A stretch of DNA of 63,315 nucleotides, counting the filler, from Intoshia linei (Eukaryota; Animalia; Orthonectida), in the NCBI GenBank assembly GCA_001642005.1. It is 6 parts of 6 records of this genome, joined end to end, with 100 filler letters (N's around TTAATTAATTAA, not from the genome) between each part and the next. Parts side by side here need not be neighbours in the genome. Positions count along the whole stretch, not along the records: positions 35,537 to 51,195 come from LWCA01000900.1; 5 more parts are not named here. One strand, given 5' to 3'. The notes beneath the pieces are model-generated. The model saw nothing but the letters and a program-made list of their open reading frames with translations. It did no database searches and was not told the origin of the DNA. Made by a program: the position numbers and the translations under genes. This document shows, piece after piece, positions 35,301 to 51,624 of the stretch (the stretch's first letter is position 1; each line of letters opens with the position of its first letter).

Positions 35301-35584
35301 AATTTAGAATTTATTGGTATATTGTAAGATCCTTACTATTATTTAATGACCGTAAAGAAATAAGTATTGAATAATTTTCTCTAGAAATACAAACAGCCAG
35401 TTTCTCAGTTTTATAGCCGTCATATCTAATTATTCTNNNNNNNNNNNNNNNNNNNNNNNNNNNNNNNNNNNNNNNNNNNNTTAATTAATTAANNNNNNNN
35501 NNNNNNNNNNNNNNNNNNNNNNNNNNNNNNNNNNNNCAAAGCTTTCAAAAATAATTATAATCACCAAAAAATTAATATAATTCA

Positions 35585-35613
35585 GGGGGTTCCAACACTT
35601 TTGACCGGCACTG
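35585..35613. mobile_element. Tc1-like terminal inverted repeat
   Basis: ggggttccaacacttttgaccggcactg|TA at a contig start. Confidence 0.55.
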
Positions 35614-36707
35614 TATACGGTAATAAAAATATTCACATAAGTAATGAATTAAATTTTATCATTTTTAAATTTGTTTGACTCTTAATTTTATAAACTTATG
35701 TTAACAAAATTATTTTTTTACAATAGTACTTAAAAAATATTTGAATAGAAACATTTAAAATGTTTTGACCCAATTCATATAAATTCATGTCTATTTTTGA
35801 AATTATGTAATTTTTTTATAAATGACGAAAAGTTTATCCGGGAACTTTGTCTAAAATAAACGATTTTTTATTGATTTTTTTAATTGATATGATTAGTATC
35901 ACATGATCTATGTTATATATTAAAATTATAATAAAAACTGGAAACTAAGGGGAAAAAATGGAATCTAAATATTAAAAGTACTATATTGCCTAAAATATAA
36001 TTTTTTGATTGAAATTTAATTATACAATTTAGTTTGTTAATATTTGTTTAAGTATAATGAAAATTTTTGTATAATAAAAATAAAAACATAAATGTTTTTC
36101 AGAACTTAAATTTCATTAATGGAACAATCAGTTTAACTATTTGATTTGAAAAAATAGCAAATAAAACATTATAACTCTAACACTGAGATATGTCTTTTTT
36201 AAATTACAAAAAAAGTGAAATTACAATATAATAATAGCCATATTGTACAGTGTAAACTGTACAATTACTCATTGACTATATCATAATTGATTTATAACGA
36301 ATTAATGCGTTAATGCTTATTAAATCTATCATAAGATATAATTATTAAACATATCACATAAAATTGATACAATTACATTGAGTGTAAAATTATTGTTTTG
36401 AATATAGTCTATAGCTCATAAACAAATTAATTGTGATTATAATGACTCTATTGATGTTGTCTAATTAAGTGCGAAAAATTTAGATAATTATTGTCACATG
36501 CAATACAAATGGGTAGTGTGACAAATTGAACAATTAATAATAAAAAAAATTGTTGATTCGTTCTATGACGTTAAATATACATGTTATATATTGATTATAT
36601 CAATATGATGTAAAGTATCACATTTCATACTTTTAAAATTTACAAACGACTGACATCACTTATCAAATCTTTCAAAACTCAAAATTTATCAATAAATAAC
36701 GTTAAAA

Positions 36708-38034
36708 ATGACTTTAACGAATATTGCAATTGTATTGATTGTGATGTTCGCGGTAAATATAAAAAATATCAACCTACTATTGTAATTCTAGACTGTATGT
36801 GGAACAGGAAATTTTCATTTTGATTTTATTTCTTACCACAATGAAAATGGAAGAGATATCAATGGATCATATTGTGACTACCTGAGTAAATGCGATCTAT
36901 ATAGCACAGTGGAAATTCAAACAGTAGATACGTAATTTCACAATGTTTGTGTAAATCATATTTTAATTAGAATTTATCAATGGGATAATTCGATGGATAA
37001 ATACTTATCAGATAGTAACGTCTTGGTTGATAATCATCAATTTACGTATAACATCACATTAAAAGAGATTCCAGTAATTTTTAAACTAATAATCTATTTG
37101 AATCTAACATATTCCAGCTTAATTAATTAATTAAAAAAATCAAAATATAACCATTTTTAATATACAGCTTATAGTGATAAGTGTATATATCACATATATT
37201 TTGTAATCATTAATTATATTTATCAATTTCAACTTTAGAAAGTGGTCAATATCGTTATTTATATTTATGATTACGACGAACGTGACGATGACGATTTGGT
37301 AGACATTATTGAAATAAATTATTATAATTATTCACATGTCGATATATATCACAAGGCTCACATAAGCAAGTAATTTACAAATTAACACATTTAATATACT
37401 ATTTAGCGATGCAGAATATATTTTTTTAAAATTTAAGATATATTATATTGAAAACAAAAAAAAGAAAGAAAATTTTCATCAAAGGTAATGTATAGATTGA
37501 AAAACAATATAAATTCTGTTTAGTAATTCTAAGGATAACAAAAGAGAACTCATCGATAAATTGGATATAATTAACAAAAACAAAATAAACAGCCTAAACA
37601 TGATGATAGATAAAAACATTCCAAAACATAATGTTTCAAACTTTATAGATAATAATGATACATTAAATGTCAAAAATGAAATAATGTTAAAGAAGAATAA
37701 ATTTCAATCTCAAATTATTAACAAAATTAGGAAAAATTATAGAAACATCAATATCACGACGCAGAGAAATGACCGTATCGAATTGAAATTAAGAGAAAAA
37801 ATGAGCGAACAAAGTAAAAGATTTGCTAATGATTACAAAGCATTGACTGATATGATGTTTATTTCATTCTGTATTGCTTTAATTGGCTGTGGTGGTGCCC
37901 TTATTCTAATTTTATATGCTAAAATTAAAAAATGGAAAACGGTAGAAAAAATGTCTAATAAACCAAATAAAAACATTTTCTACATTTCAAAGATCATACA
38001 TGGCACGCTAAAAGGGATTGTTAGTAGTAAATAA
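36708..38034 (+). CDS. type I membrane protein with Notch-ligand N-terminal (MNNL/C2-like) domain, no DSL/EGF
   Basis: Six exons (36708-36752, 36792-36931, 36971-37073, 37239-37369, 37407-37484, 37524-38034) splice in frame: signal peptide MTLTNIAIVLIVMFATVCG, TGNFHFDFISYHNENGRDINGSYCD..KCD, IVIYIYDYDERDDDDLVD, N/K-rich stalk, TM FISFCIALIGCGGALILILYA and a basic tail. Confidence 0.75.
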
Positions 38035-38926
38035 AATAAATATTTATTTTATTTGTTCAGTTTATAATTAAATGTATACATTTTAATGTCAATTTCAATT
38101 ATTAGAAGCTCACGTTTTTACCAATAAAAGTCCATTTTACTATTAGTCCGAAATGTTTTGACCAGGAGTGCTTAGACTTCTGAAATTTCAAGATTAAAAT
38201 CAGACATTGAATATTTTTTTATACTATATTGACATGTGAATAATACTAAATTTTTTTTTGACCATGAAGGCTTTATTTTTTTGTTTGTATGCTAATTGTA
38301 TCAGTTGTCATATTTTTTAGAATTCTGGGACTTTTTTCATTTAAAAAAACAAATGGTAATTTATAGTGTTTTGATCGTACAGATGCAAGTTTTAAGGTGG
38401 GCGTTAATGTTCATGATTCTAAAAAAATTTCTACAATTCGTATTTTTAATTCTGGGACTGTATTTTTAAAAAAAAGTCATTTTGGTTTTTAAATAAGTTT
38501 TTTTAATAAAGTGTCAATTTAAGAGAGTTCTAGACTCTTAGTTTACATAGACCCTTGCTAATGTTTTGTATATATTACTTCGTCATGTATTATAATACAA
38601 TATAAATAATTATTCAAAAAACCATAATAACAAGAAATATGATTATTTAATGATTTTTATTTAAAAAAATGAAATTCCGTTAACGAGCGTGTTATTATAA
38701 GGAAAATTCTATATTAACCCTTTGGCGTAATTTACATGTATACAAACAAAAATGAGACCATTAAAAATTTGAAATGTTACTATACGTGTAAAAAATGGAG
38801 CTATCTAAATTTTATTTTTGTCAATGCGTGCAAAATAAGAGGCGGTACAAACATTGCATATGAACTGATTATTTGTATAGAATGTTACGTTAAATTTGAA
38901 ATTTTGATCTTATATAAGAACTAAAT

Positions 38927-39600
38927 TATAGGTTGACTGTTATGTACTACGTACAAACAGGGCCTAGCTCTGCCGAGGGCCATTTTTATTATACTTTAAA
39001 AATAAATTCACGTTGAAAATCTAACTTAACAATTATACTATGCACTATTATCAATCCTTTAAAGGAGTGGTTCCCAAATTGGTTTCAGGTAGAACCATCA
39101 TATTACATTACCTTTTACTTTAAAGTGAATTATTTTATCTTAATTTTTTGTTTAACATTTGCGTACAGAATTTTAAAAACAATTGGTATCCCATTTTTTT
39201 AATTTATTAGACAGAATGTGTGTATAATATTAAAAATAAAGTAAAAACAGTCCAATCCTAAAAATTGTCATAAATAGCATAAATTCCAAAAAAATAAAAT
39301 TACATCCAACCTAAAAATTGTCATAAATAGCATAAATTCCAGAAAAAATATAATTATAAAAACCTATTTTGTAATTTTCAATGTGATGACATTAATTCAG
39401 CACCAATTATGTATCAATGATTAACCGAATCTTCACTTTATAAACATATTTCGGTAGAATTTTACCAATATTGCAAAGGTTGTAATAAATATAAAAATGA
39501 TATTAACAAAGTTGTATTACTTTTAGTTTCGTTGTTGTAGTTTTTATTTAAATTTTATTCAAAGTGTTTTGAAAATGAGAATTTGATATTATTTAAAATT
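38927..39600 (-). mobile_element. non-autonomous Helitron, 3' portion
   Basis: Collinear with 42287-42900, including the hairpin end. Confidence 0.7.
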
Positions 39601-41689
39601 GATTTAAGTTTCAAACATAAAGTTAAATTACTGCCAAATTTATCTATTTCTATTTATTAATTTAACATTTTTAAATATTAAATATTTTAATATGTAAATA
39701 TTAACACTATGCAACGCATGTGTGCATACAATTTGAAATTGTTCTGCTATAAAAAATTGAAAATTTATATTTTCAATGGATTGTAAATGACAATTTTACT
39801 ATTACATTGACTGTAACACCATGCTATATTTGTTATTTTTTAGATACTTTATATGCAGTAGTATAATTATGATTATTTAAAAACCTTAAAAATGAATATA
39901 TTTTGTAATAATAATTATCTACATACTAATTATTGTATAGTATGAAATTATAAATTTATGAATTTTCACGATTTAAACATCAGCTTTCTGAAAAATTTAA
40001 TTTTCGAAAAACACATTTTCTTTTTGGTAGATTTAAATGGAAAAAATTATTAATTTCAGTATAAAAGACTTAAGGGATACTTTGCTATTTTACCGTATAT
40101 TACATATTTACATACATCGTATTAAAAATACATATTTATATATAGTCATTTTTTTGCGACAACTATATAATTCATTAACCAAAATAAACGAAGTGCAATG
40201 ACTCTCAATGTTATCCATATAATAATTTAATTTAAAAATATTAATAATGTATTTCATTAGAAAACTGTAAAGTTGATAATCACTTCCAAATAGTTGACTT
40301 GTATTTGAGATTAATGTATATAAATATAGAATAACATTACTAATGCATTTTAAAAATAAAAATGTAATTAATTAATTTAAAATCCAATAAATACTGTTAA
40401 ATGGTAGAGTAATTTTAAAAATAAAAATATAATTAAATTGCATAAATTTCTTCAAGTGTAAAAATATGAATAGTATTATGAATTGTATTTTTGATTTATA
40501 TAGAATAAAATAGTAAGCTGCGATTGAATTGAGAATATAAAATATATTTGAGAGTAGAATACATAAAATGATTCAGTATTTATTAATATGTAATGTCGAG
40601 ATATAAAAACTGGTATTTTAGTCTGTAATCACTGAAATGAAAAAAATCATAATTAAGAATTTGTATGTGAGATGAAACATCAAGTATTCTAGTAAAGAAT
40701 GTCTTGAGAAATACATTACTTATTGTTCCTGTAAATTCTTTCGATATTACATGTATTTTATTGATATAAATCAATCAAGCTGAACTTGGATTCTTAGATA
40801 ATTCTTCAACTTTTACTTTGTCATTTTTTGGAAAAAAATATTATTGAAGATTAAAATTACATGAAGATATTTCAATATATTTTAATTTATTTGATTTCCT
40901 TTTCATTGGTTTTTTGTACGGTAAATAATATTATTTTGTCGTTTAATTTTTATCATCTTAATTTTAAATATTTAGAATTCATTAAATTTTGAATGTCAAG
41001 AAGGTAATTTTTAATTTTGTTTATATTAAAAAAATTTTTTCTAATTTCTCATAATATTAATTATATTTTATTGCTATTTACATTATTGTTATTTATTTTA
41101 ATTGTTCTAAGTTCAACGAAATTATTCATAAATAAAGAAAAAAATTATGCATAAAGTACTATTATAATAGTATGTATAAGTGAAAATTTTATTTTTGATA
41201 ATGCATTAAATGTATTAAATTCTTACATGTTCTAGATTCATGGTACTAGATATATTCTGTAAAAAATGTTGATTCATCTCATACATCGGGGTTTACAAAA
41301 AACATAATGCTAAATCAGCATCTAAATATATTCCAAATTGGTCGCCACAGAGTCCTGCCTTAAAACATCATCGAAAATTTTAGAGTTAACTGAAGAAAAG
41401 GGTTCGACAAAAATATCGCCAAAATTTGTCGTCACTATGAAGAACCACGAAACACGAATTTCCTAGCAGATTATATTGTATAACATCAGATAAGGCGAAA
41501 ATACTTAGCTCTGACAATATTATAAACATATAAAGATATTAAACACTTACACAACATATTTAATTGATTTTGAGTTTTAATTATTAAATTAATCATAGAT
41601 GCTCAAACACATCAAACATTAAAATTGATCTAATTTAATAATATTTAATTTAAACATGAAGTAATTGCGCAGCAATTGTGAATTTTAGT

Positions 41690-41860
41690 TAAATTAAATA
41701 AGTTAGATTCAAACAAATTCCCAATATTATATCATTCTCTAACCAACGCTCCTTCTACATCTGTCAGCGTAGAAAGAACTTTTAGTCGGTTAAAAAATGG
41801 TAACTAAACAAAGATCATTAACACTTGACAATATATAAAAATACATAATTTTCTATCCCA
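41690..41860 (+). pseudogene. degenerate hAT-like transposase C-terminal fragment
   Basis: LYHSLTNAPSTSVSVERTFSRLK (S-x-x-x-E-R-x-F-S dimerisation motif) followed by a frameshift and stop. Confidence 0.55.
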
Positions 41861-42286
41861 CCAATAAATACTCTATTAATTATCCATCTGCATAATTTAC
41901 TTTTCTTCATTTAAATTAATATTGGATACTGAAGTATTAAAGACTTTTATTAAAGGTACTGGATATAGAAAGTTAATTTTTTTAGAGACAAAATATTTTT
42001 GGAAATATTTTGAATTTTCAAATGGTACGAAATATAAATATATAAAAAATACATGTAAAAAATTAAAAATAATCAATTGAAGTTAACAAGATCAAATTAA
42101 AGATTTATACAAAAAATTTTTTCTAAATTTACTATTATAAATATTAGCTACTATATTAGCTATTATAATAGCTAAAAGTTACTAAAAATCAGTCGTTAGG
42201 TTATTTAAAATTTTTCTACAGTAATAATATATATTCAGTACCAATTATGTATTTATAATTAACGGAATCAGCACTTTATAAACATA

Positions 42287-43586
42287 CTAGCTTGGCTGTT
42301 TTATACTACGTACAAACAGCACCTAGCTCTGCCGAGGGCACTCTTTTATTATACTAAAAAAATAAATTCACGTTAAAAATCTAACTTAAAAATTTTACAA
42401 TTAACTATTATCAATCTTTTAAAGGAGTGGTTCCCAAATTTGTTTCAGGTGGAACCGTCATATCACATTACTTTTTACTTTAAAGTGAATTATTCCATCT
42501 TAATTTTTTTTGTTAACATTTGCGTAAATAATTTTAATAATAATTGTTATCCCATTTTTTTGAATTTATTAGACAGAATGTGTGTATAATATTAAAAATA
42601 AAGTAAAAAAAGTCCATTCATAAATAGCATAAATTCTAGAAATAATAAAATTATAAAAACATATTTTGTCATTTTCAATGTGATAATATATATTTAGAAC
42701 CAATTTAATAAATACTTACAAATACCAATTGTATATCAATAATTAACCGAATCTTCACTTTATAAACATATTTTAGTCGAATTTTACCAAATATTACAAA
42801 GGATTGTAATAACTATAAAAATGATATTAACAAAGTTGTTTTTGTTTCGTTGTTTAGATTTTATTTAAATTTTATTAAAAATTTTTTGAAAATTAAAATT
42901 TAAAATTTAAAAATTGCGTAGCAATAAAAAAAGTTCCGAAGGAATGAATTATATAGATTTTCACCCATAAAATTATAGGATCAATATTTACATTTTCAAT
43001 TTATGATTTTATTCGAAATAATTGAAAAATATTGCTTAATAATATATTAAAAATTATTTTTCACTGGGAATGCGTAGATTTCTGGAGTTAAAATTTTGTA
43101 TTTGTATCAACTGGAATAAGCTCTATTAGAATAATACTTTTTTTAAATGTTTGGACAGTTTATTATTTCATATTTTTTTATGTGTGGTAACATGATACAA
43201 CTCTACCACCTGTAAATTTTTTGAAGTTCTAGGGCTGTTTTTAAAAATTAAAAAAAGGAAGGGAATTTGCGGTTTTGGCCATGAAAGTATAATTTTTTTA
43301 AATTTAAATTTATGATAATGTTTATGATTTTAAAATCACCATCAGCGTATATATTTTTTTAAATTCTCCAACTCGTTTAATTATAAAAAAGAGGGACAAC
43401 AGGGGTTTTTGACTTTTAAGATGAAAAATTGGGAGGTTGAAATTTATGTTCTTATACGACCCGAAAAAAACTGAAATTGAAATGTGGTCTTTAAAAAATT
43501 CTAAGAATGCTAGTTAATTCAAAAAAGTAACACACACAGACAGACACACACAAACAAAAATCGCGTCGCATTTATATAAGTTAGTG
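42287..43586 (-). mobile_element. apparently full-length non-autonomous Helitron (~1.3 kb)
   Basis: Minus-strand 3' end is the hairpin CTGTTTGTACGTAGTATAAAACAG followed by CCAAG-CTAG|T; the 5' end is a decayed TCCTTACTTATATAA plus (GT/GTCT)n; no TIR or TSD. Confidence 0.75.
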
Positions 43587-44664
43587 TAATATAGTGATAT
43601 AAATATAAAAATAGTGGTTGAATATATATTAAAATTTATTTTTCAGCGGGTATGCGTAGATTTCTGGGGTTGAAATGAACAACACAAATTTTTACTTTTA
43701 TAATATAACCATTAGAAAACGTACTATATTAAATTTGGAGAAGAATGATATATCTCATTGTTTCAATTAAGACAGTCAAATATGTTTAATTATAATTAAA
43801 CATATTACATGGATAAATATTCAATTAAAAATTAAAAATAAAATTATAGTTTAAATTTACTATTTTGCGAATAAACAAATTTTCACTTTAACATATAAAT
43901 ATATTTAACATAACATGTAAAATAATATAAAATGCCTATATGATATCCATTGAATATTATTTGACATTATTGATAGTAACGTAATCGTGGGTATAACTCA
44001 TAAAAATGAAGTTATAAATACATTCGGTAACGAGATGATAATGATGTTAACATTGTTAAGTGCTACCAGTAACTTCAATAGCGTACTACTAGAAACTTAT
44101 ATACCATACATAAATTTATGTAGAAAATGAATAAACATTATATATTATATGTATATTCATTCTAGATTGCATTGTAGTTAAGGATAGTTACTCTAATGTT
44201 GCTCTATCGTTAATAATATATGCGAATATTTAACCAGCGGTTTTATGTATATGTAGACTGCGATAATAAATTATGAACACTAAATATGATCTTTGAATAT
44301 ATTTGGAATTTAAAGGATAACATATTGATTAAAATATAATTTCTATTATTAAAATTATTATTAATGTAATTACACAATCTAACTTGGTATATATAAACTA
44401 TATATTGAAATATACATATTAAACACTAATTTGACATGTATGCAATCTTTATGACATAAAGCTATAAATTTGTCTAATAATGCAAAATTTTTTTTAACTG
44501 ATTAAATTTAAAACAAATATTTTTCTAAATCAAACTAAGTATTCACACAATTATGCTAAATCAAGAATTTTTAATCCATAAGTAAATTCATTTGTTGTTG
44601 TCTAATGTAATTAATTAGATAATTATTCTTCGATTATTATTATATGACATATAAAAACTATTAG

Positions 44665-47600
44665 GTTGGACATTAAAAGATTTCAAATGTTTAAAATACT
44701 ACATTGAAAAGGCAACATGGAAGAAAGCATTGGATATATGCTCAAAGTAATCAATTTAATTAATTAATTAGTTTTTTGAGTTTTGATTATTGGAATATTT
44801 GGTTTAAATCAATTTAGTATTTAATTGTGAATTTTAGTGAAGGAGCAGTTTTAGTTAAAATTATTGGTGAGCAACAAAATGAAGCAATTTTTCAATTTGC
44901 TGAAAGTCAAGATACTGCAGTTACTAACTATTGGATAGGTATAATATTGATAATGTAACGTAGTGACTAAGACGCATGCCAGGGAACAAACAATGTCTAC
45001 CTACATGAGTCTAATGTATAGTAACAGTTAAAATAACAGTCTACATGAGAAAAAAATATTAACTTTTTTAAATAATGTTTTTCAGTTGAATGAGCATTAG
45101 AATGTCAAACCTATCAAGAATAAAGGACGGTTAACTTGAGAATGGTGTATTTTAGTGAAAATCAATTAATATAAAATTTTATTTGATAAAGATGTGTAAT
45201 ACACATTGTGTATTCGAGTTGCTTTAAACAAAAAACTAATAACAAATTAATACATATTATTTTTTATATTAATTATAATTTAATACATATTAAATTTTAT
45301 ATTAATTNNNNNNNNNNNNNNNNNNNNNNNTTTATATTAATTTTAATTTAATTTTATTTTCATCAGTTTAAAAAAATAGACGATTTAGAGAGTTGAAAAT
45401 TCAATTTTTGAAACATGAAGTGATTATCAATTTAAAAAACCATGTGTTCAGCATCCAATAAATATATAAATATTGTTCATTAATTATAATTATTGGCGTA
45501 AAGTATGTTCTCTAAATTTAAGAAATTAAATCTTTAAAAAAATAGATGAAATACAGCTAGAACCAAATTTAAAAAAATATTTGTGTAGCTACAAATGGGA
45601 TTAACATATTAAGTTGTGTAACATGACAATTCAATATAATGCTGTTAAAAAAAATAAGTCATTTTTTCATTTTATATACTATTTTTAATCGTTTAGTAAA
45701 AATTATAAACGCAACAAAGAGAATAACATTATATATTTACTGATTTTTAATTTTAATAAATATTGTTTTTATTTTAAAAATACACACCGTTAGTACTAAT
45801 CGTCCCTCAAATTCTAAAATTTTACCAAAAATTGACACCATAATGAGCATACCTTAAAGATTTTTATAATACTCAAATGAACCTTGTTTACTCATGGAAT
45901 CTATTTATTTTATTATTTTTATTTTAACAAATGTACTTGTTGGGATGAATATTTTTCAAAATCCAGTAAAACGGAAACTCATGAATAGATTATGACCCTT
46001 ATCAAGCATACCTCGTACTTCACTCGTGAAATATTATATTAATAGATTAATAAAAAATTTTTAATTTAAAATCATAAACATTTACCTATGTAACTAATAT
46101 TCCAATAGGTATGAACAGAGTAGATTTAAGCGACAAAACATCTTTTCGATGGTCAAATGGAGATGTAATTAATACACTGTCAGTTGGTTTTTGGTCAAAA
46201 AATCAACCCATAACTGATTCAACTACTAACGAAGATTGTGTTATTATTGAAAAAAGCAACGCAATGTATATTTATCCATACGCGTTTAAATTTATAAGCT
46301 GTGAATTGACAAATGCATTTATTTGTGAAAAGAAAATAATTTGTTTGATTGGTATAATTTATTATATAATTATTTATTAGTTCCATTTTAATAAAAATTA
46401 TTATTAGGTTATTTTCCATGTAATCAAGGTAAATGTATTAAAAATGAATTTAAATGCGACGGGGTTAATGATTGTGACGATGGATTGGATGAACTAAACT
46501 GTCGTAATTATTTTAAATATAAAACTACAGACATGTAATGTTAATAATCATATTTAGAGCTTATCAACGGAGTAACACAATTTTACCAGCAATATACAGA
46601 AAGCCCAGGACAAATAACGTTTAGCCAAGCCACCGAATCTGTTAGGCATATTTGGCACATATTGACAGGCATAAATAACAGAATATCATTGAATGTATTT
46701 ATTATTTGTTAAAATTGAATAATTTTTAGATGACAACATTAACGTCATCAACTGGAATTGATACCCTTATCATTAGAAGTGGGTCGCAAAGTATTGTGGA
46801 CGGACAGATTATTGCTGTATATACTGGTACATTAATTGGTTATGAAAAAAATATATACAGCATTGATAATAATATAATTATGGAATACATTAAAAGTCCA
46901 TCGTCCAACGATTTAACATTTAGTGCAGATTATAAGTGGATATCAGGTATTATATTTTGTCAGTTGTTTAATAAAATTCAGACACATCTATAAATCAAGC
47001 AAAAATTCAAAGAATAACAGCTCAAGATTCTGATCAGGTTATAGAATATTCTAATGATGGAAAAACATTTTATGGAGATAAAGAAAAGATATGGATTATT
47101 TCTGTTGATACTGGATCACTTATAACTATAAAAGTAATTTATTGTTGTTAATTTCGTTCACGTGGTGAATTGAGTGTTTGGTTGGTTTGTTAATTCCTTT
47201 AATTTTTAATAGAAAAACGTAAAATGCTGCACAGTTAAATAAGTAAAATTATTAACTACCACTTCTCAAATGATGCTACAAATAATTACTAATAATAATA
47301 AATTATAATTATACTAGCTTGACTGTTATATACTTTGCACAAATAAAGTGCAAAAGTGAATAATTTTGAAAACAATATAATTATAGTTACAACCATAAAA
47401 ATCGTCATAGGCAACATGAATTCAAGAAGAAATAAAAATTTAAATTTAAATATCTGTAGTATCTACTTTTATCTTCTATCATGCATTTCGGATGAAGAAA
47501 TATTACCCACATTGAAATAAAATTTATTATAATAAATTATAATATATACATTTTTTTTATTATTTACTTTTTTGGATTTATTATATGCAACAAATTTAAT

Positions 47601-50600
47601 AAATACTTAAATTAGATGTTCATTTGACCTTAATAGAGGTGGCCACAGTCAGATTTGAGTTTATTACAGTCAGATGTAGTTAATTAAGCATCAAAGTGAA
47701 ATAATTATTATAAACTATTTAAAATCAAACAATTCTTTCATTATAACAATAATTAATCCAAACTAACGTAGTCGATTTTGTAGCAGTTAAAGATGCATTT
47801 AAATTTAATTATAATAGTCCCTTCCTACAAGTAACACCTTGAACATGAAAATTTACTTCTTATAAATAAAAGTAAGTAATCTAAAGTAATCTATAAGTAA
47901 CATTCTCGGGTAAATCAATATTACAAAAATTTATAGGAATGGCAAATGTATGGCAGAGTTGCAAAAAAGTAAATTTAACAGGGATGTTAAGGGTTGGCCA
48001 AATTTTTCAAATCAATTTTTGGGTGTTTATTGGCAATTTTTGAAACCATTTTTTTAATACGTATTGGTAATTTTTGTGTGTAAATTAAAAATAATGCCCT
48101 ACTGCATATTCTTTTACATTTACCAGGATTGCTAAGGGTTGGCCAAATTTTTCAAATCAATTTTTGTGTTCTTATGGCAATTTTTGAATATAGAATATTA
48201 ATAACTTACAAAACAATTTTGTTATATATACCAGGGTTGTTTCGGGCGGGTCGGTTTGGGGTTTGAGTTTTTTTGACAAAATTTGACAAATCTTTTTTTC
48301 TCTTTAACCTATAATCATGGAAATTTTTAATGAAAACATATGCATGCGGGATAATATAAATTTATATTATATATATTTTGTATATCAGTGGTTCCCAAAA
48401 TTTTTCCACCATTTTATTTTATTTATTCATTCTTAATTTTATTTAAAATGTTTATTTTGGACCACTAGTGGTCCATGTGGATCACTTTAGGAAACCACTG
48501 ATATATGGACATAAATAGATTTATTTTATGAAAAATGTACTACATTGAAGAGTTTGAATGATGCACCTGATAATATGCCCCATAAATTTATTAACATTTA
48601 ATAATGTATTTATATATTTAGTTAACATTGTAAATTATACATTTTAGATTAACACTATTTATCTAATCTATGGATCTAGTCTTTCATTTTACAATGGAGA
48701 TTATTTGAAATCGAAGGGAACATTACTGGCTACCTATCAAGAAGTACAAAAAATAGCATCAACCATTACAGTTATATCTACATCTAACGAAATAACAATT
48801 ATATTTACAAACGATTACAATTATGAATCTTATTTTGATGCAGTTTATAATAAAGGTAAACCTAAACTGTAACTATTCAGTTGTTTGTAACGTTACCTTT
48901 TCTGGAAAGCAGATAATAATAAAATTTTTTTATATAAAAAAATGACTTAAGGGGATCGAAATAAAATGAACAATAGAACATTTCATTTTCCATATTTTTA
49001 ATTTAGATCAATAAAACTCGTATTATATTATAAAATCTCAACAAAATTTTATTTTTAGTTTATTCATGTAATGACTAAAAAAATTGTATTTTGGGATTAA
49101 TAAAGTTTACAATATTTGAATATATCTACAATTAGGATGTGGATATGATATGGTTATGTCATACGGTCAATTATCGTCTCCTGGATACGGAATTATCGTA
49201 TATCCTCCATTTGTTATGTGCAAGTGGACAATAAAACCAGAGAGCTATCCATACGCTGCTTCACTCACTTTAGAAATGACACTTTCTGCATATCAAATAT
49301 TCAGTGACGATAATTTAATTATTCGCAGAATTGATGCTGATCTTACGAAATCTATTTTATTTGATTCAAAAACAGATATGACCCCTGATACTCAAATTTT
49401 TGACGCATCTAATGGGTATTTTGAAATTGAATTTACGACAAATTCTATTAATCATGGAAAAGGATTCAAATTAGATTATGCCATAAATTGCAACCCAATA
49501 GTTCCCAATGCGAATACTAAAATGATACCAAATACATCTAGATTAGGAGATAAGCCTGTTTTCAGTTGTGATGTCGGATATTCATTTGAAGAATTTGTTT
49601 ATCAAGGCAAAATAACGTTTACAGGAGAATGTACTGAACAAGGATGGTCAATGTGCATAATACCAACCTGCACAAGTAAATTTTAATTAAACCTTTTCAT
49701 CATAGTATCTTAGAAAAAATTTGTGGTCATCCTCCGGTTTCAACCAATGTTTATTTGGTATCTAAAACTGGGATAACTTATGAATCAACAGCACAATATG
49801 TATGCAAAACAGGAACCATTATAGATACCACGGAAACTGCCGATTTAACCGCAACATGCACTGAGAGTGGGGCATGGACGCCGAGCCCTATTTGTAAACG
49901 TAAATAATTAGTTATAACATTATTATTTTAATTAATCTTAGCATCCGATTGTGTTCCAATTGTTATTACTAATGGTATCATTACTATATCACTTGGCACG
50001 AACCAAGAAATTGATTCTATTTCGGAAATATCATGCGATCCAGGATATTTTGTGAGTGGAGACACAATAGTGCAGTGCAAATCCACTGGATGGGTGCCAC
50101 CATTGCCTACATGTGAAAGTAATAATTGCAGTAAAATTATATACTAAACTATTATATTATTTAGAAATTACGTGTTTTGAAAGACAATTTTTACATACCA
50201 CAACCATGAACGCTGAAGAATTAATAGTAACACCTTTAAAATATAATGATCAACGAGAAATGAGTTGTTTGGATGGATTTTCAGAACAAAATCAAAATAC
50301 TTTTGTGACGTGTAATGCTGACGGAACATTAACAAATTTTGTCTGTATAGGTAATATAATAAAAATTATTTGAAGTAATAAAATAATATTAATAATATAA
50401 AAAATTCATAATTAGCAGAATTTTGTTAGAAACCTGAATATTTAAGTATTTTAAATTCTGTTAATTAAGTAATAAATTAATTAAAAAAAACTTGATACAC
50501 GTTCAAACTTTTTTATATTTGATTCATTTTTATAGATGATGACGACTGTGATCCGGAACCATGTGATGTTAATACATCAACTTGCCAAGATTTGACTGGA

Positions 50601-50896
50601 GGTTATAAATGTAACTGTAATCCCGGATATAAACCAACATTAATTGACTCTAATGTATGCGAAGGTAATTATAATTATAATTATGAACTTAAATTAATTA
50701 TTAGACATCGACGAATGCGCTGATCCTGGAACCTATGATTGCAGTCACAGTTGTAATAATGCTTCTGGATCCTTTCAATGCACTTGTCCAGATGATATGA
50801 TCATTTACAGCCTTAATTTACATAACATACCACTTGGAACAGATGAAACTGGATACGATTACGGAGATAATCCTAGAATAAATTACACATGCATAA
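44665..50896 (+). CDS. uninflatable-like multidomain extracellular protein (C-type lectin, LDLa, CUB x3, Sushi, EGF); partial at both ends
   Basis: [37 protein letters not shown] (CTL); [30 protein letters not shown] (LDLa); CUBs incl. [30 protein letters not shown]; Sushi repeats; cb[13 protein letters not shown].. and [13 protein letters not shown]. The domain order matches Drosophila Uninflatable. Confidence 0.8.
48386..48500. mobile_element. tiny hAT-like MITE in intron
   Basis: TIR CAGTGGTTCCCAAA / TTAGGAAACCACTG; no clear TSD. Confidence 0.55.
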
Positions 50897-51624
50897 GTAT
50901 ATATTTTTCATAACATAATACTATCCTATATCATAATGTATACCCTTAATAGGAGTGTAAGTACAATTTTTTATATTAAAAGTACACCCTCATCTTATGA
51001 GAAATTTTTGTGTCTCTAATTTTCTCCCAATCTTGCTTTACAATTCTTTAATAAAACGTTGGGCTATGCCTTTAAAGTTTTAAACATATTATCATTCATC
51101 GCAACTAATATTTATTAATTTTTTTAAAATTTTATTAATAAAACTATTTTTTTTCAATTTATTTTAATAAAATATAAATTTATATAAATATTAAANNNNN
51201 NNNNNNNNNNNNNNNNNNNNNNNNNNNNNNNNNNNNNNNTTAATTAATTAANNNNNNNNNNNNNNNNNNNNNNNNNNNNNNNNNNNNNNNNNNNNAGGTG
51301 TTGATACACTCGACTTTTTATGTAACGAATACAGTGTAAAAAGGAAGACCCTCTACTAAGTGAACATTTTAGACTCGAATATTTGAGTGTTCATCATTGT
51401 AGAAATGGTGAACAAAAAAATTATTGACAAAGTAACCGTAAAATTAAAGTTGATATTATAACAATTCACAAAAAAATATAACTTATTTAATTTTATATTT
51501 TACAAAGAAAACTAAATAATAAACATTATTATAATAATTATATCAATTCATTTTTTGTTTCTTTAGTAAAACCAAAGTAATTAGATATTTTTAATGATCT
51601 TGCAAATTTTTCAGACTTTATTTC

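What the first reader, a model, noticed from the sequence alone, without database searches (positions are those of the whole stretch)
36708..38034. Notch-ligand-like membrane protein with only the MNNL/C2 domain (no DSL, no EGF)
Seen: a six-exon gene encoding signal peptide, G-x-F-x-F-x-F-x-S-Y-x-N-x-x-G-R-D-x-x-G-x-x-C-D..C-D, an acidic loop IYDYDERDDDDLVD, a cysteine-free N/K-rich stalk, one TM helix and a short basic tail. Known: Delta/Serrate ligands begin with this pattern (a lipid/Ca2+-binding C2 fold) and need the following Cys-rich DSL and EGF domains for full Notch binding. Inference: a stripped-down ligand derivative that may act as a decoy or cis-modulator, or as a repurposed lipid-binding surface protein. 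Most of it is invisible in the ORF track.
Basis: partly seen in the sequence, partly recalled or inferred. Interest (0 to 1): 0.8.

Follow-up and report, generated by a model that had tools for sequence, protein, structure and literature searches.

The report
Membrane protein with lone extracellular C2 domain
This is a real six-exon gene of the parasitic worm Intoshia linei that puts a single calcium-binding C2 domain, related to the tip domain of Notch ligands, on the cell surface without the parts a ligand needs to bind Notch. It belongs to a small gene family found so far only in this species.

Summary
Window 36708-38034 (+) is a six-exon gene with GT..AG introns of 39, 39, 165, 37 and 39 nt. 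It encodes 335 aa, identical to GenBank OAF66540.1 (hypothetical protein A3Q56_05736, Intoshia linei).

Architecture: signal peptide, a ~140-aa beta domain, a Cys-free N/K-rich stalk, one TM helix and a basic tail. There is no DSL or EGF.

Four paralogs exist in I. linei, three of them full-length, and they share the intron positions and phases they retain.

Two AlphaFold models, the ESM Atlas models and three fold searches all give a C2 beta-sandwich. Structure alone does not separate Notch-ligand C2 from cytosolic C2 (Z 7-10 for both). Pfam does not reach significance (MNNL 13.3 bits, C2 12.5 bits).

At the sequence level, the best relative outside the family is the C2 module next to the DSL domains of a sea-anemone Delta-like protein (hhalign 90.6%, E 1.3e-6). 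That protein aligns colinearly with Jagged-1 and DLL4.

All five canonical C2 calcium-binding Asp positions and a loop-1 Cys pair are invariant in the four full-length members.

Best reading: a lineage-specific, Notch-ligand-derived, C2-only surface protein that binds membranes through Ca2+. The Notch decoy idea is untested. Interest is moderate.

The parts
36708..36752 (+). Exon 1: start codon and hydrophobic signal peptide (MTLTNIAIVLIVMFA), phase 0 donor
   Evidence: mean Kyte-Doolittle 2.32. The intron sits at the same alignment column in three paralogs and two columns away in P0007, phase 0 in all.
36792..36931 (+). Exon 2: first C2 strand (GNFHFDFISYHN), loop 1 with C43-D44 ... C49-D50, and the next strand
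   Evidence: (Pfam MNNL E 0.06, profile positions 1-27)
36971..37073 (+). Exon 3: middle C2 strands, with the conserved sequon N89-I-T
   Evidence: aligned to synaptotagmin-1 C2B
37239..37369 (+). Exon 4: strand IVIYIYD, acidic loop 3 (D107-Y-D109-x5-D115), and the following strands
   Evidence: (the Asp triad aligns on synaptotagmin-1 C2B)
37407..37484 (+). Exon 5: last C2 strand (YIFLKFKIYYIE; type II topology) and the start of the stalk
   Evidence: strand 145-155 in P0001, 149-158 in P0005
37524..38034 (+). Exon 6: Cys-free N/K-rich stalk, TM helix (about residues 276-298, window about 37852-37920), basic cytoplasmic tail of about 37 aa, TAA stop
38035..38040 (+). AATAAA polyadenylation-signal-like hexamer directly after the stop codon

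Best explanation
The gene (A3Q56_05736 of the orthonectid Intoshia linei) encodes a type I membrane protein. Its whole folded ectodomain is one C2 beta-sandwich of type II topology, starting right after the signal peptide. This domain sits on a variable stalk that is probably glycosylated and partly helical. A TM helix and a short basic tail follow.

The C2 domain is most likely derived from the N-terminal C2 (MNNL) domain of a DSL-type Notch ligand that lost its DSL and EGF modules. It keeps a loop-1 Cys pair and has the full Asp pentad of calcium-dependent C2 domains.

Inferred mechanism: in calcium-rich extracellular fluid, the tip loops load Ca2+ and bind anionic phospholipid head groups on an apposed membrane or on the cell's own membrane. 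The family would then act as a calcium-dependent membrane-recognition or adhesion module of the parasite surface, not as a canonical Notch activator.

Shown: the gene model, the paralog family, the predicted C2 fold, the conserved Asp and Cys positions, and the absence of DSL/EGF. Inferred: ancestry from a Notch ligand, calcium and lipid binding, and the biological role.
For: Gene and family:
- The gene model is exact and matches the database protein.
- There are four paralogs, three full-length. Their C2 domains are 31-47% identical to this protein and their stalks cannot be aligned. Every intron a paralog retains sits at the matching position with the same phase, 0, 2, 0, 2, 2 in order.

C2 fold:
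- AF2 of P0001 and P0005 gives 7-8 strands.
- Foldseek top hits are all C2 domains, including Jagged-2, Jagged-1, DLL4 and DLL1 at E 5e-5 to 1e-3.
- VIA gives Z 8-10 to C2 domains only, in both the re-ranking and the exhaustive search.
- The Atlas ESMFold models match Delta-like proteins at TM 0.67-0.74.

Sequence:
- The family profile hits synaptotagmin-1 C2B at E 0.0016, with D107, D109 and D115 aligned on its loop-3 Asp triad.
- The only convincing hit outside the family among 1.84 billion representatives is the Actinia Delta-like protein P0006.
- hhalign gives 90.6%, E 1.3e-6, over 108 columns.
- HMM score is 30.0 bits, against at most 4.9 bits for 3000 shuffles.
- P0006 aligns colinearly with Jagged-1 and DLL4 through C2 and DSL.
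- Protein-language-model features put an MNNL cluster first for two paralogs, at 0.89 and 0.90.

Conserved positions:
- D44, C49 and D50 are invariant in all five members. C43, D107, D109 and D115 are invariant in the four full-length members.
- The sequon N89-x-T is conserved, which argues for a luminal or extracellular location.

Background: Jagged-1 C2 binds Ca2+ and phospholipid through Asp residues of the equivalent loop (PMC3888931).
Against: - Pfam recognises neither MNNL nor C2 above threshold. MNNL reaches 13.3 bits against a cutoff of 22.5, for exon 2 only, and disappears with the full-length protein. C2 reaches 12.5 bits against a cutoff of 22, in one paralog.
- The models have low confidence (mean pLDDT 49 and 60).
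- Structural Z scores for Notch-ligand C2 are tied with or below those for cytosolic C2 domains.
- No Jagged or DLL chain appears in the profile search of PDB sequences at E<=10.
- The link to MNNL runs through one unusual predicted cnidarian protein, whose own C2 modules Pfam MNNL does not detect.
- The third and fourth MNNL cysteines are missing.
- There is no expression or biochemical data.
- The family is seen in one fast-evolving species only.
Confidence: 0.55

Rival explanations
1. Notch decoy or cis-modulator: the lone C2 domain still contacts Notch EGF repeats, as the C2 of DLL4 and Jagged-1 does, and tunes signalling without activating it.
For: The domain shows sequence and feature affinity to DSL-ligand C2. 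Published work states that the ligand C2 domain has both lipid-binding and receptor-binding properties (PMC5538765 abstract). Some accepted ligands lack a detectable DSL domain, for example DLL3 (PMC12166595).
Against: The DSL domain is described as required for receptor binding (PMC12166595), and it is absent here. No Notch-contact residues could be mapped. Whether I. linei has Notch is unknown. The conserved positions are the calcium and lipid loop residues, not a recognisable receptor-binding surface.
Confidence: 0.12
2. The function is the same (extracellular Ca2+/lipid-binding C2) but the origin differs: a classical cytosolic-type C2 domain (synaptotagmin-, ferlin- or perforin-like) was captured behind a signal peptide. 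The resemblance to MNNL reflects only general C2 features.
For: The family profile finds synaptotagmin-1 C2B as the only C2 in the PDB sequence set. The top VIA hits are otoferlin, cPLA2, dysferlin, CAPS and Nedd4 C2 domains. The Asp pentad is canonical, more so than in Jagged or Delta. A perforin-like C2 cluster is among the top feature hits.
Against: With the same profile, the Delta-like C2 module scores higher (24.3 to 30 bits over 113 positions) than synaptotagmin C2B (17.9 bits over 66 positions). No cytosolic C2 protein appeared in the 1.84-billion-protein search with exon 2. The position directly after the signal peptide, the type II start and the C..CD-x-Y loop match DSL ligands.
Confidence: 0.25
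3. A p24/GOLD-type or DOMON-type luminal beta-sandwich protein, as suggested by UniProt's automatic names for two paralogs. It would act in cargo sorting rather than at the cell surface.
For: UniProt's automatic names are 'GOLD domain-containing' for P0005 and 'DOMON domain-containing' for P0011. The overall layout of signal peptide, beta domain, helical stalk, TM and short tail resembles p24 proteins (this comparison rests on general knowledge).
Against: There is no Pfam EMP24_GP25L, GOLD or DOMON hit at E<=10 in any member. No GOLD or DOMON structure appears among the top hits of three fold searches, one of them exhaustive.
Confidence: 0.03
4. Annotation artefact or decaying pseudogene without function.
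For: There is no expression data. The protein is called hypothetical. One family member (P0011) is a truncated 81-aa model that lacks the first loop Cys.
Against: The reading frame is open through six exons with consensus splice sites. Four full-length members keep the same intron phases, invariant core residues, signal peptide and TM, while their stalks diverge freely. That is the pattern expected under purifying selection on the domain.
Confidence: 0.05

Closest known systems
N-terminal C2 (MNNL, PF07657) domain of Delta/Serrate/Jagged Notch ligands
   Same: It is an extracellular C2 sandwich placed directly after the signal peptide of a type I membrane protein. It shares the first-strand pattern G-x-F-x-x-x-x-x-x-x-x-N-x-x-G, a Cys-stapled loop 1 ending in C-D-x-Y/F, and an acidic loop at the position of Jagged-1 D140/D144. 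Foldseek E values are 5e-5 to 1e-3 and VIA Z scores 7-9.6 (PMC3888931).
   Different: There is no DSL domain and no EGF repeats. Only one Cys pair is present. The Asp pentad is fully canonical. Pfam MNNL is below threshold. The stalk is N/K-rich rather than Cys-rich.
Actinia tenebrosa Delta-like protein XP_031571273.1 (P0006)
   Same: It is the best sequence relative outside the family: hhalign 90.6%, E 1.3e-6, 27% identity over 108 columns. It shares the motifs SSG-x-I/F..N..G.D..G..C..CD and D-x-D..DDLID.
   Different: Its C2 modules are each followed by DSL domains. It has the extra MNNL cysteines (CDTFLKIC). It is a cnidarian protein and a predicted model with three C2 and five DSL modules.
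Synaptotagmin-1 C2B and other Ca2+-dependent cytosolic C2 domains (PF00168)
   Same: The profile match is E 0.0016 over 66 residues, with the D-x-D-x5-D loop aligned. The fold is the same. The family's D-x5-D spacing in loop 1 also fits the classical motif, a comparison made from general knowledge and not aligned by a tool.
   Different: Those domains are cytosolic, lack disulfides and N-glycan sites, and synaptotagmin has type I rather than type II strand order.
Perforin C2 domain
   Same: It is one of the few other extracellular, calcium-dependent, membrane-binding C2 domains. A perforin-like C2 cluster is among the top feature hits.
   Different: Perforin's C2 is C-terminal to a MACPF pore-forming domain in a secreted protein. 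Here the C2 is alone on a membrane anchor.

Membership tests
MNNL / Notch-ligand C2 (PF07657) | Pfam PF07657 score above the gathering cutoff (22.5 bits) | tested here: not met
   Exon 2 alone scores 13.3 bits, E 0.06, on profile positions 1-27. None of the five full-length members gives a hit at E<=10.
MNNL / Notch-ligand C2 (PF07657) | C2 beta-sandwich directly after the signal peptide of a type I membrane protein | tested here: met
   AF2 and ESMFold models were compared by Foldseek and VIA. The signal peptide and TM were identified. This rests on prediction only, with pLDDT 49-60.
MNNL / Notch-ligand C2 (PF07657) | Detectable sequence homology to the C2 of a bona fide DSL ligand | tested here: met
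   hhalign of A1 against P0006 gives 90.6%, E 1.3e-6. The HMM score is 30 bits against at most 4.9 for 3000 shuffles. P0006 is colinear with Jagged-1 and DLL4. Significance is moderate and rests on a single bridging protein.
MNNL / Notch-ligand C2 (PF07657) | Full MNNL cysteine pattern (loop-1 cysteines plus the Cys in CD-x-[FY]-x-x-[IV]-C and its partner) | tested here: not met
   Only C43 and C49 are conserved. The position of the third Cys is E/V/R.
DSL-family Notch ligand (Delta/Serrate/Jagged) | DSL domain (PF01414) after the C2 domain | tested here: not met
   No DSL is found in P0001 or any paralog. No Cys-rich exon lies in the introns or between 38034 and about 44700.
DSL-family Notch ligand (Delta/Serrate/Jagged) | EGF repeats in the ectodomain | tested here: not met
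   The stalk is free of Cys. The EGF-like exons at 50523-50910 belong to a separately annotated downstream gene.
DSL-family Notch ligand (Delta/Serrate/Jagged) | Binds and activates or cis-inhibits Notch | not testable with these tools
   This needs binding and signalling assays. The Notch inventory of I. linei could not be obtained here.
Classical C2 domain (PF00168) | Pfam PF00168 above the gathering cutoff (22 bits) | tested here: not met
   The best result is 12.5 bits, E 0.17, in P0005 only.
Classical C2 domain (PF00168) | Eight-stranded C2 sandwich | tested here: met
   The P0005 model has 8 strands. Only C2 domains lead three fold searches, with Z up to 9.9.
Classical C2 domain (PF00168) | Calcium-ligand Asp residues in loops 1 and 3 | tested here: met
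   D44, D50, D107, D109 and D115 are invariant in the four full-length members. The loop-3 triad aligns on synaptotagmin-1 C2B. The loop-1 assignment is by motif (general knowledge). Actual Ca2+ binding was not tested.
p24 / GOLD (PF01105) and DOMON | Profile hit or GOLD/DOMON fold | tested here: not met
   No such Pfam hit at E<=10, and none among the fold-search hits.

The most novel reading that the evidence does not exclude
Intoshia linei carries a small family of stand-alone Notch-ligand C2 (MNNL) proteins: ligand derivatives stripped of DSL and EGF that still work at the cell surface. This would show that the ligand C2 domain has an autonomous function, either calcium-dependent membrane recognition or a minimal Notch-modulating contact, that selection can keep on its own in an extremely simplified animal.
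Probability: 0.2. Interest if true: 0.75.

Novelty: new variant of a known kind. Interest (0 to 1): 0.5.

Why it matters
C2 domains are almost always cytosolic. The main extracellular examples are the tip domain of Notch ligands and perforin.

A membrane-anchored protein whose only folded ectodomain is such a C2, kept in several paralogs by a parasite with a strongly reduced gene set, would be a natural experiment. It would show what the Notch-ligand C2 domain does by itself, a point still debated for Delta and Jagged (lipid binding versus receptor contact).

It also gives a name and a testable activity to five 'hypothetical' orthonectid proteins. These may matter for contact between the parasite and host tissue.

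Tried and rejected
- Exon-wise Pfam gave only a sub-threshold MNNL hit.
- Exon-wise PDB phmmer gave chance hits for exon 2 and weak synaptotagmin hits for exon 4.
- The word-index protein search was uninformative three times. Exon 6 found nothing. The P0010 domain and the P0006 module each found only themselves, missing known paralogs. Its blanks therefore carry no weight.
- Seven of the thirteen hits of the exon-2 library search are repeat-summed chance matches: five ankyrin-repeat proteins, an LRRCT/Olduvai protein and a short repeat protein.
- A hidden micro-exon in the 165-nt intron 3 was considered and rejected, because it breaks the frame (read).
- GOLD and DOMON readings were rejected.
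- No tandem paralogs were found in the piece or in the four paralog loci.
- Literature searches for Notch or Delta in orthonectids found nothing usable.
- The joined spliced protein was never typed or assembled for a search. Exons were searched by reference. The full-length analyses used the database record P0001 that the exon-2 search returned.

Full report
**1. The observation.**
The piece (window 35537-51195, 24% G+C) is contig LWCA01000900.1 of the Intoshia linei assembly GCA_001642005.1.

Reading the sequence and translating each proposed exon by reference gives a six-exon gene on the + strand:

| Exon | Window coordinates |
|---|---|
| 1 | 36708-36752 |
| 2 | 36792-36931 |
| 3 | 36971-37073 |
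| 4 | 37239-37369 |
| 5 | 37407-37484 |
| 6 | 37524-38034 |

- The introns are 39, 39, 165, 37 and 39 nt. All are GTAA(A/T)..(T)TAG and more A+T-rich than the exons.
- The CDS is 1008 nt, giving 335 aa. An AATAAA hexamer follows the stop codon directly.
These are the G-x-F-x-F-x-F-x-S-Y-x-N-x-x-G-R-D-x-x-G-x-x-C-D...C-D motif (G21 to D50), the acidic loop IYDYDERDDDDLVD (105-118), a Cys-free stalk with 30% N+K, one TM segment (peak at 278-296) and a basic tail.

The whole-library search with exon 2 alone returned a 335-aa database protein at 100% identity, P0001. This is OAF66540.1, 'hypothetical protein A3Q56_05736'. A script confirmed that P0001 is encoded exactly by the six-exon path. All full-length analyses used that record.

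**2. A gene family.**
The same search found four more I. linei proteins that have the motif at the same N-terminal position:

| Protein | Length | Locus tag |
|---|---|---|
| P0005 | 270 aa | A3Q56_07459 |
| P0007 | 321 aa | A3Q56_05243 |
| P0010 | 470 aa | A3Q56_00121 |
| P0011 | 81-aa fragment | A3Q56_05590 |

- The alignment (A1) shows a conserved block of about 140 residues, 31-47% identical to P0001. After it comes a stalk that cannot be aligned and varies from about 40 to about 250 residues. It is rich in N-x-S/T sequons, up to 19 in the whole of P0010. A TM helix and a tail follow.
- Every intron a paralog retains sits at the matching alignment position (intron 1 two columns off in P0007; intron 5 in the unalignable stalk), with the same phase, 0, 2, 0, 2, 2 in order. 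P0005 lacks the fifth intron.
- The genes lie on different contigs, and no tandem copies were seen.
- G21, F23, F25, I28, Y30, N32, E33, D44, C49, D50, Y52, I57, W66, V79 and L80 are invariant in all five members. C43, the Y-D-Y-D..D-L-[IV]-D-I block, A-H..N and the sequon N89-x-T are invariant in the four full-length members.

A conserved core combined with free stalks and kept intron phases is what a functional family looks like. It does not look like a mis-prediction.

**3. The fold.**
Pfam does not reach significance.
- MNNL (PF07657) scores 13.3 bits, E 0.06, for exon 2 alone on profile positions 1-27.
- No full-length member gives an MNNL hit.
- C2 (PF00168) scores 12.5 bits, E 0.17, in P0005 only.

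A profile of the family against all PDB sequences finds synaptotagmin-1 C2B as its top 16 hits, at E 0.0016-0.006 over 66 residues. D107, D109 and D115 align on the loop-3 Asp triad. No Jagged or DLL chain appears at E<=10.

AlphaFold2 with the five-sequence alignment gave low-confidence models: P0001 at mean pLDDT 49 and P0005 at 60. Both show a 7-8-stranded sandwich spanning residues about 20-158, followed by a long helix.

| Search | Model | Result |
|---|---|---|
| Foldseek vs PDB | P0001 | Only C2 domains at the top: Trichomonas C2 2.5e-5, Jagged-2 5e-5, then Jagged-1, DLL4, Drosophila Delta, DLL1 |
| Foldseek vs PDB | P0005 | Same families at about 1e-3 |
| VIA-align re-ranking | P0001 | Z 9.9 otoferlin C2A, cPLA2, dysferlin; 9.6 DLL4; 9.3 DLL1; 9.1 Delta. 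All tied |
| Exhaustive VIA search | P0005 | The first 26 hits on the beta domain are all C2: CAPS 8.8, Nedd4-2 8.7, otoferlin 8.2, Serrate 7.3, Delta 7.0 |
| ESM Atlas own models | P0001, P0007 | Match Delta-like proteins at TM 0.67-0.74 and generic C2 at 0.64-0.73 |

So the C2 fold is supported by two predictors, on two or three paralogs, and by one sequence profile. Structure does not say which kind of C2 it is.

The chain starts with the strand that opens type II C2 domains and ends with an extra strand encoded by exon 5. This matches cPLA2, the ferlins and the Notch ligands. The topology assignment rests on general knowledge of C2 domains.

**4. Is it a Notch-ligand C2?**
Among 1.84 billion representatives, the only convincing hit to exon 2 outside the family is P0006. 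The rest are repeat-summed chance hits: five ankyrin-repeat proteins, an LRRCT/Olduvai protein and a short repeat protein.

P0006 is Actinia tenebrosa XP_031571273.1, named 'Delta-like protein' by UniProt. It has five DSL domains (Pfam E 1e-46) and three N-terminal-type modules.

These modules read SSGRINVVFTRFQNPSGEDVNGKYCELASKCDTFLKICV ... YGFYVAAWDNDDLSSDDLIDTFSYTF. That pattern is close to the Intoshia family.

| Comparison | Result |
|---|---|
| hhalign, family vs P0006 | 90.6%, E 1.3e-6, 108 columns, 27% identity |
| Family HMM vs P0006, best domain | 24.3 bits |
| Family HMM vs module 2 alone | 30.0 bits |
| Family HMM vs the other two modules | 9.2 and 10.8 bits |
| Family HMM vs 3000 shuffles, best score | 4.9 bits |
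| Family HMM vs synaptotagmin C2B, best domain | 17.9 bits |

P0006 in turn aligns colinearly with Jagged-1 C2-DSL-EGF1 (E 6.4e-11) and with DLL4 from its first strand. In that alignment:
- CDTFLKICV lies on CDTYFKVCL of Jagged-1.
- YVAAWD..NDD lies on LLVEAWDssND, the loop that holds Jagged-1 D140 and D144. Mutating these residues abolishes Ca2+ binding and lowers Notch activation (PMC3888931).

Protein-language-model features rank an MNNL cluster first for two paralogs, at 0.89 with 170 shared features and 0.90 with 175. By the tool's own calibration this is a lead, not proof.

Against membership: Pfam MNNL is not met, the third and fourth MNNL cysteines are absent, and the bridge rests on one unusual predicted protein whose own modules Pfam MNNL does not detect.

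I put ligand ancestry at roughly 55-60%. An independent capture of a classical C2 gets about 25%.

**5. What is not there.**
- No member has a DSL or EGF domain.
- The stalk, the TM helix, the tail and the stop codon share one exon, so no Cys-rich module can be hidden between them.
- No Cys-rich open segment with a DSL or EGF pattern lies in the introns or between 38034 and about 44700.
- EGF-like exons at 50523-50910 belong to a separately annotated 823-aa gene with LDLa, CUB, Sushi and cEGF domains. It starts at about window 44717.

**6. Mechanism.**
Shown by sequence:
- The five Asp positions of calcium-dependent C2 domains are invariant in the four full-length members. They form D-x5-D in loop 1 (D44, D50) and D-x-D-x5-D in loop 3 (D107, D109, D115).
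- Each loop-1 Asp is preceded by a conserved Cys (C43, C49). This fits a disulfide staple across that loop.
- The conserved sequon, together with the signal peptide, places the domain outside the cell or in the lumen.

Inferred: in extracellular calcium the tip loops bind Ca2+ and then anionic lipid head groups, as shown for Jagged-1, DLL1 and Serrate (PMC3888931). The protein would therefore tether or sense an apposed membrane (host cell, neighbouring cell or gamete) at a distance set by the variable stalk.

Tyr-based motifs in several tails (YSTF in P0005, YTPL in P0007, NPNY in P0010; read) hint at endocytic cycling. They are not conserved in position.

The decoy or cis-modulator idea is not excluded, but nothing speaks for it. 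Whether I. linei has Notch could not be determined here.

**7. Novelty and verdict.**
The gene is in GenBank as a hypothetical protein. I found no description of C2-only or MNNL-only membrane proteins. The literature defines Delta by MNNL plus DSL and notes variable loss of either domain, always with EGF repeats kept (PMC6040629, PMC12166595).

I rate it a new variant of a known kind, of moderate interest (0.5). The architecture is unusual and testable. However, the link to Notch ligands is only moderately supported, the models are of low confidence, and the family is so far confined to one fast-evolving parasite.

Noticed in passing
window about 44717-51195 (+); ORFs and segments at 46111-46380, 46395-46535, 46730-46993, 49150-49686, 50113-50373, 50523-50910: A separate downstream mosaic gene (annotated product 823 aa) runs on towards the contig end. 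Its exons encode C-type lectin, LDL-receptor class A, CUB, Sushi and calcium-binding EGF modules. It is not part of the C2 gene.
   Followed up: partly
window 39251-39356: A 53-nt unit is tandemly duplicated (2.0 copies, 94% match) in the 6.7-kb A+T-rich gap between the two annotated genes.
   Followed up: no
L004:6001-6321 (P0011, A3Q56_05590): This is a truncated family member of 81 aa with two introns at the family positions. It has a 5-residue deletion that removes the first loop Cys, and no exon-4 equivalent was found in the 3.3 kb of locus downstream. It is probably a decaying copy or an incomplete model.
   Followed up: partly
P0006 (Actinia tenebrosa XP_031571273.1): This predicted Delta-like protein has three C2 modules and five DSL domains and no EGF hit. 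It could be a tandem array fused by the gene predictor or a true multi-module protein. Pfam MNNL misses its C2 modules even though they align with Jagged-1 and DLL4, so MNNL-based surveys may under-count divergent ligand C2 domains.
   Followed up: partly
P0005 and P0011 database names: UniProt's automatic names ('GOLD domain-containing', 'DOMON domain-containing') for two family members are not supported by Pfam or by the fold searches. They look like marginal beta-sandwich profile matches.
   Followed up: yes
window 36708-38034 and loci L001-L004: Most introns in this family are 35-41 nt long, with GTAA..TAG ends in the window gene. A few are longer (52-764 nt). The short class is notably uniform.
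   Followed up: partly
The word-index protein search returned only the query itself, even when known paralogs of 31-47% identity lay within the allowed length range. Blanks from it are uninformative for this A+T-rich, fast-evolving genome.
   Followed up: no
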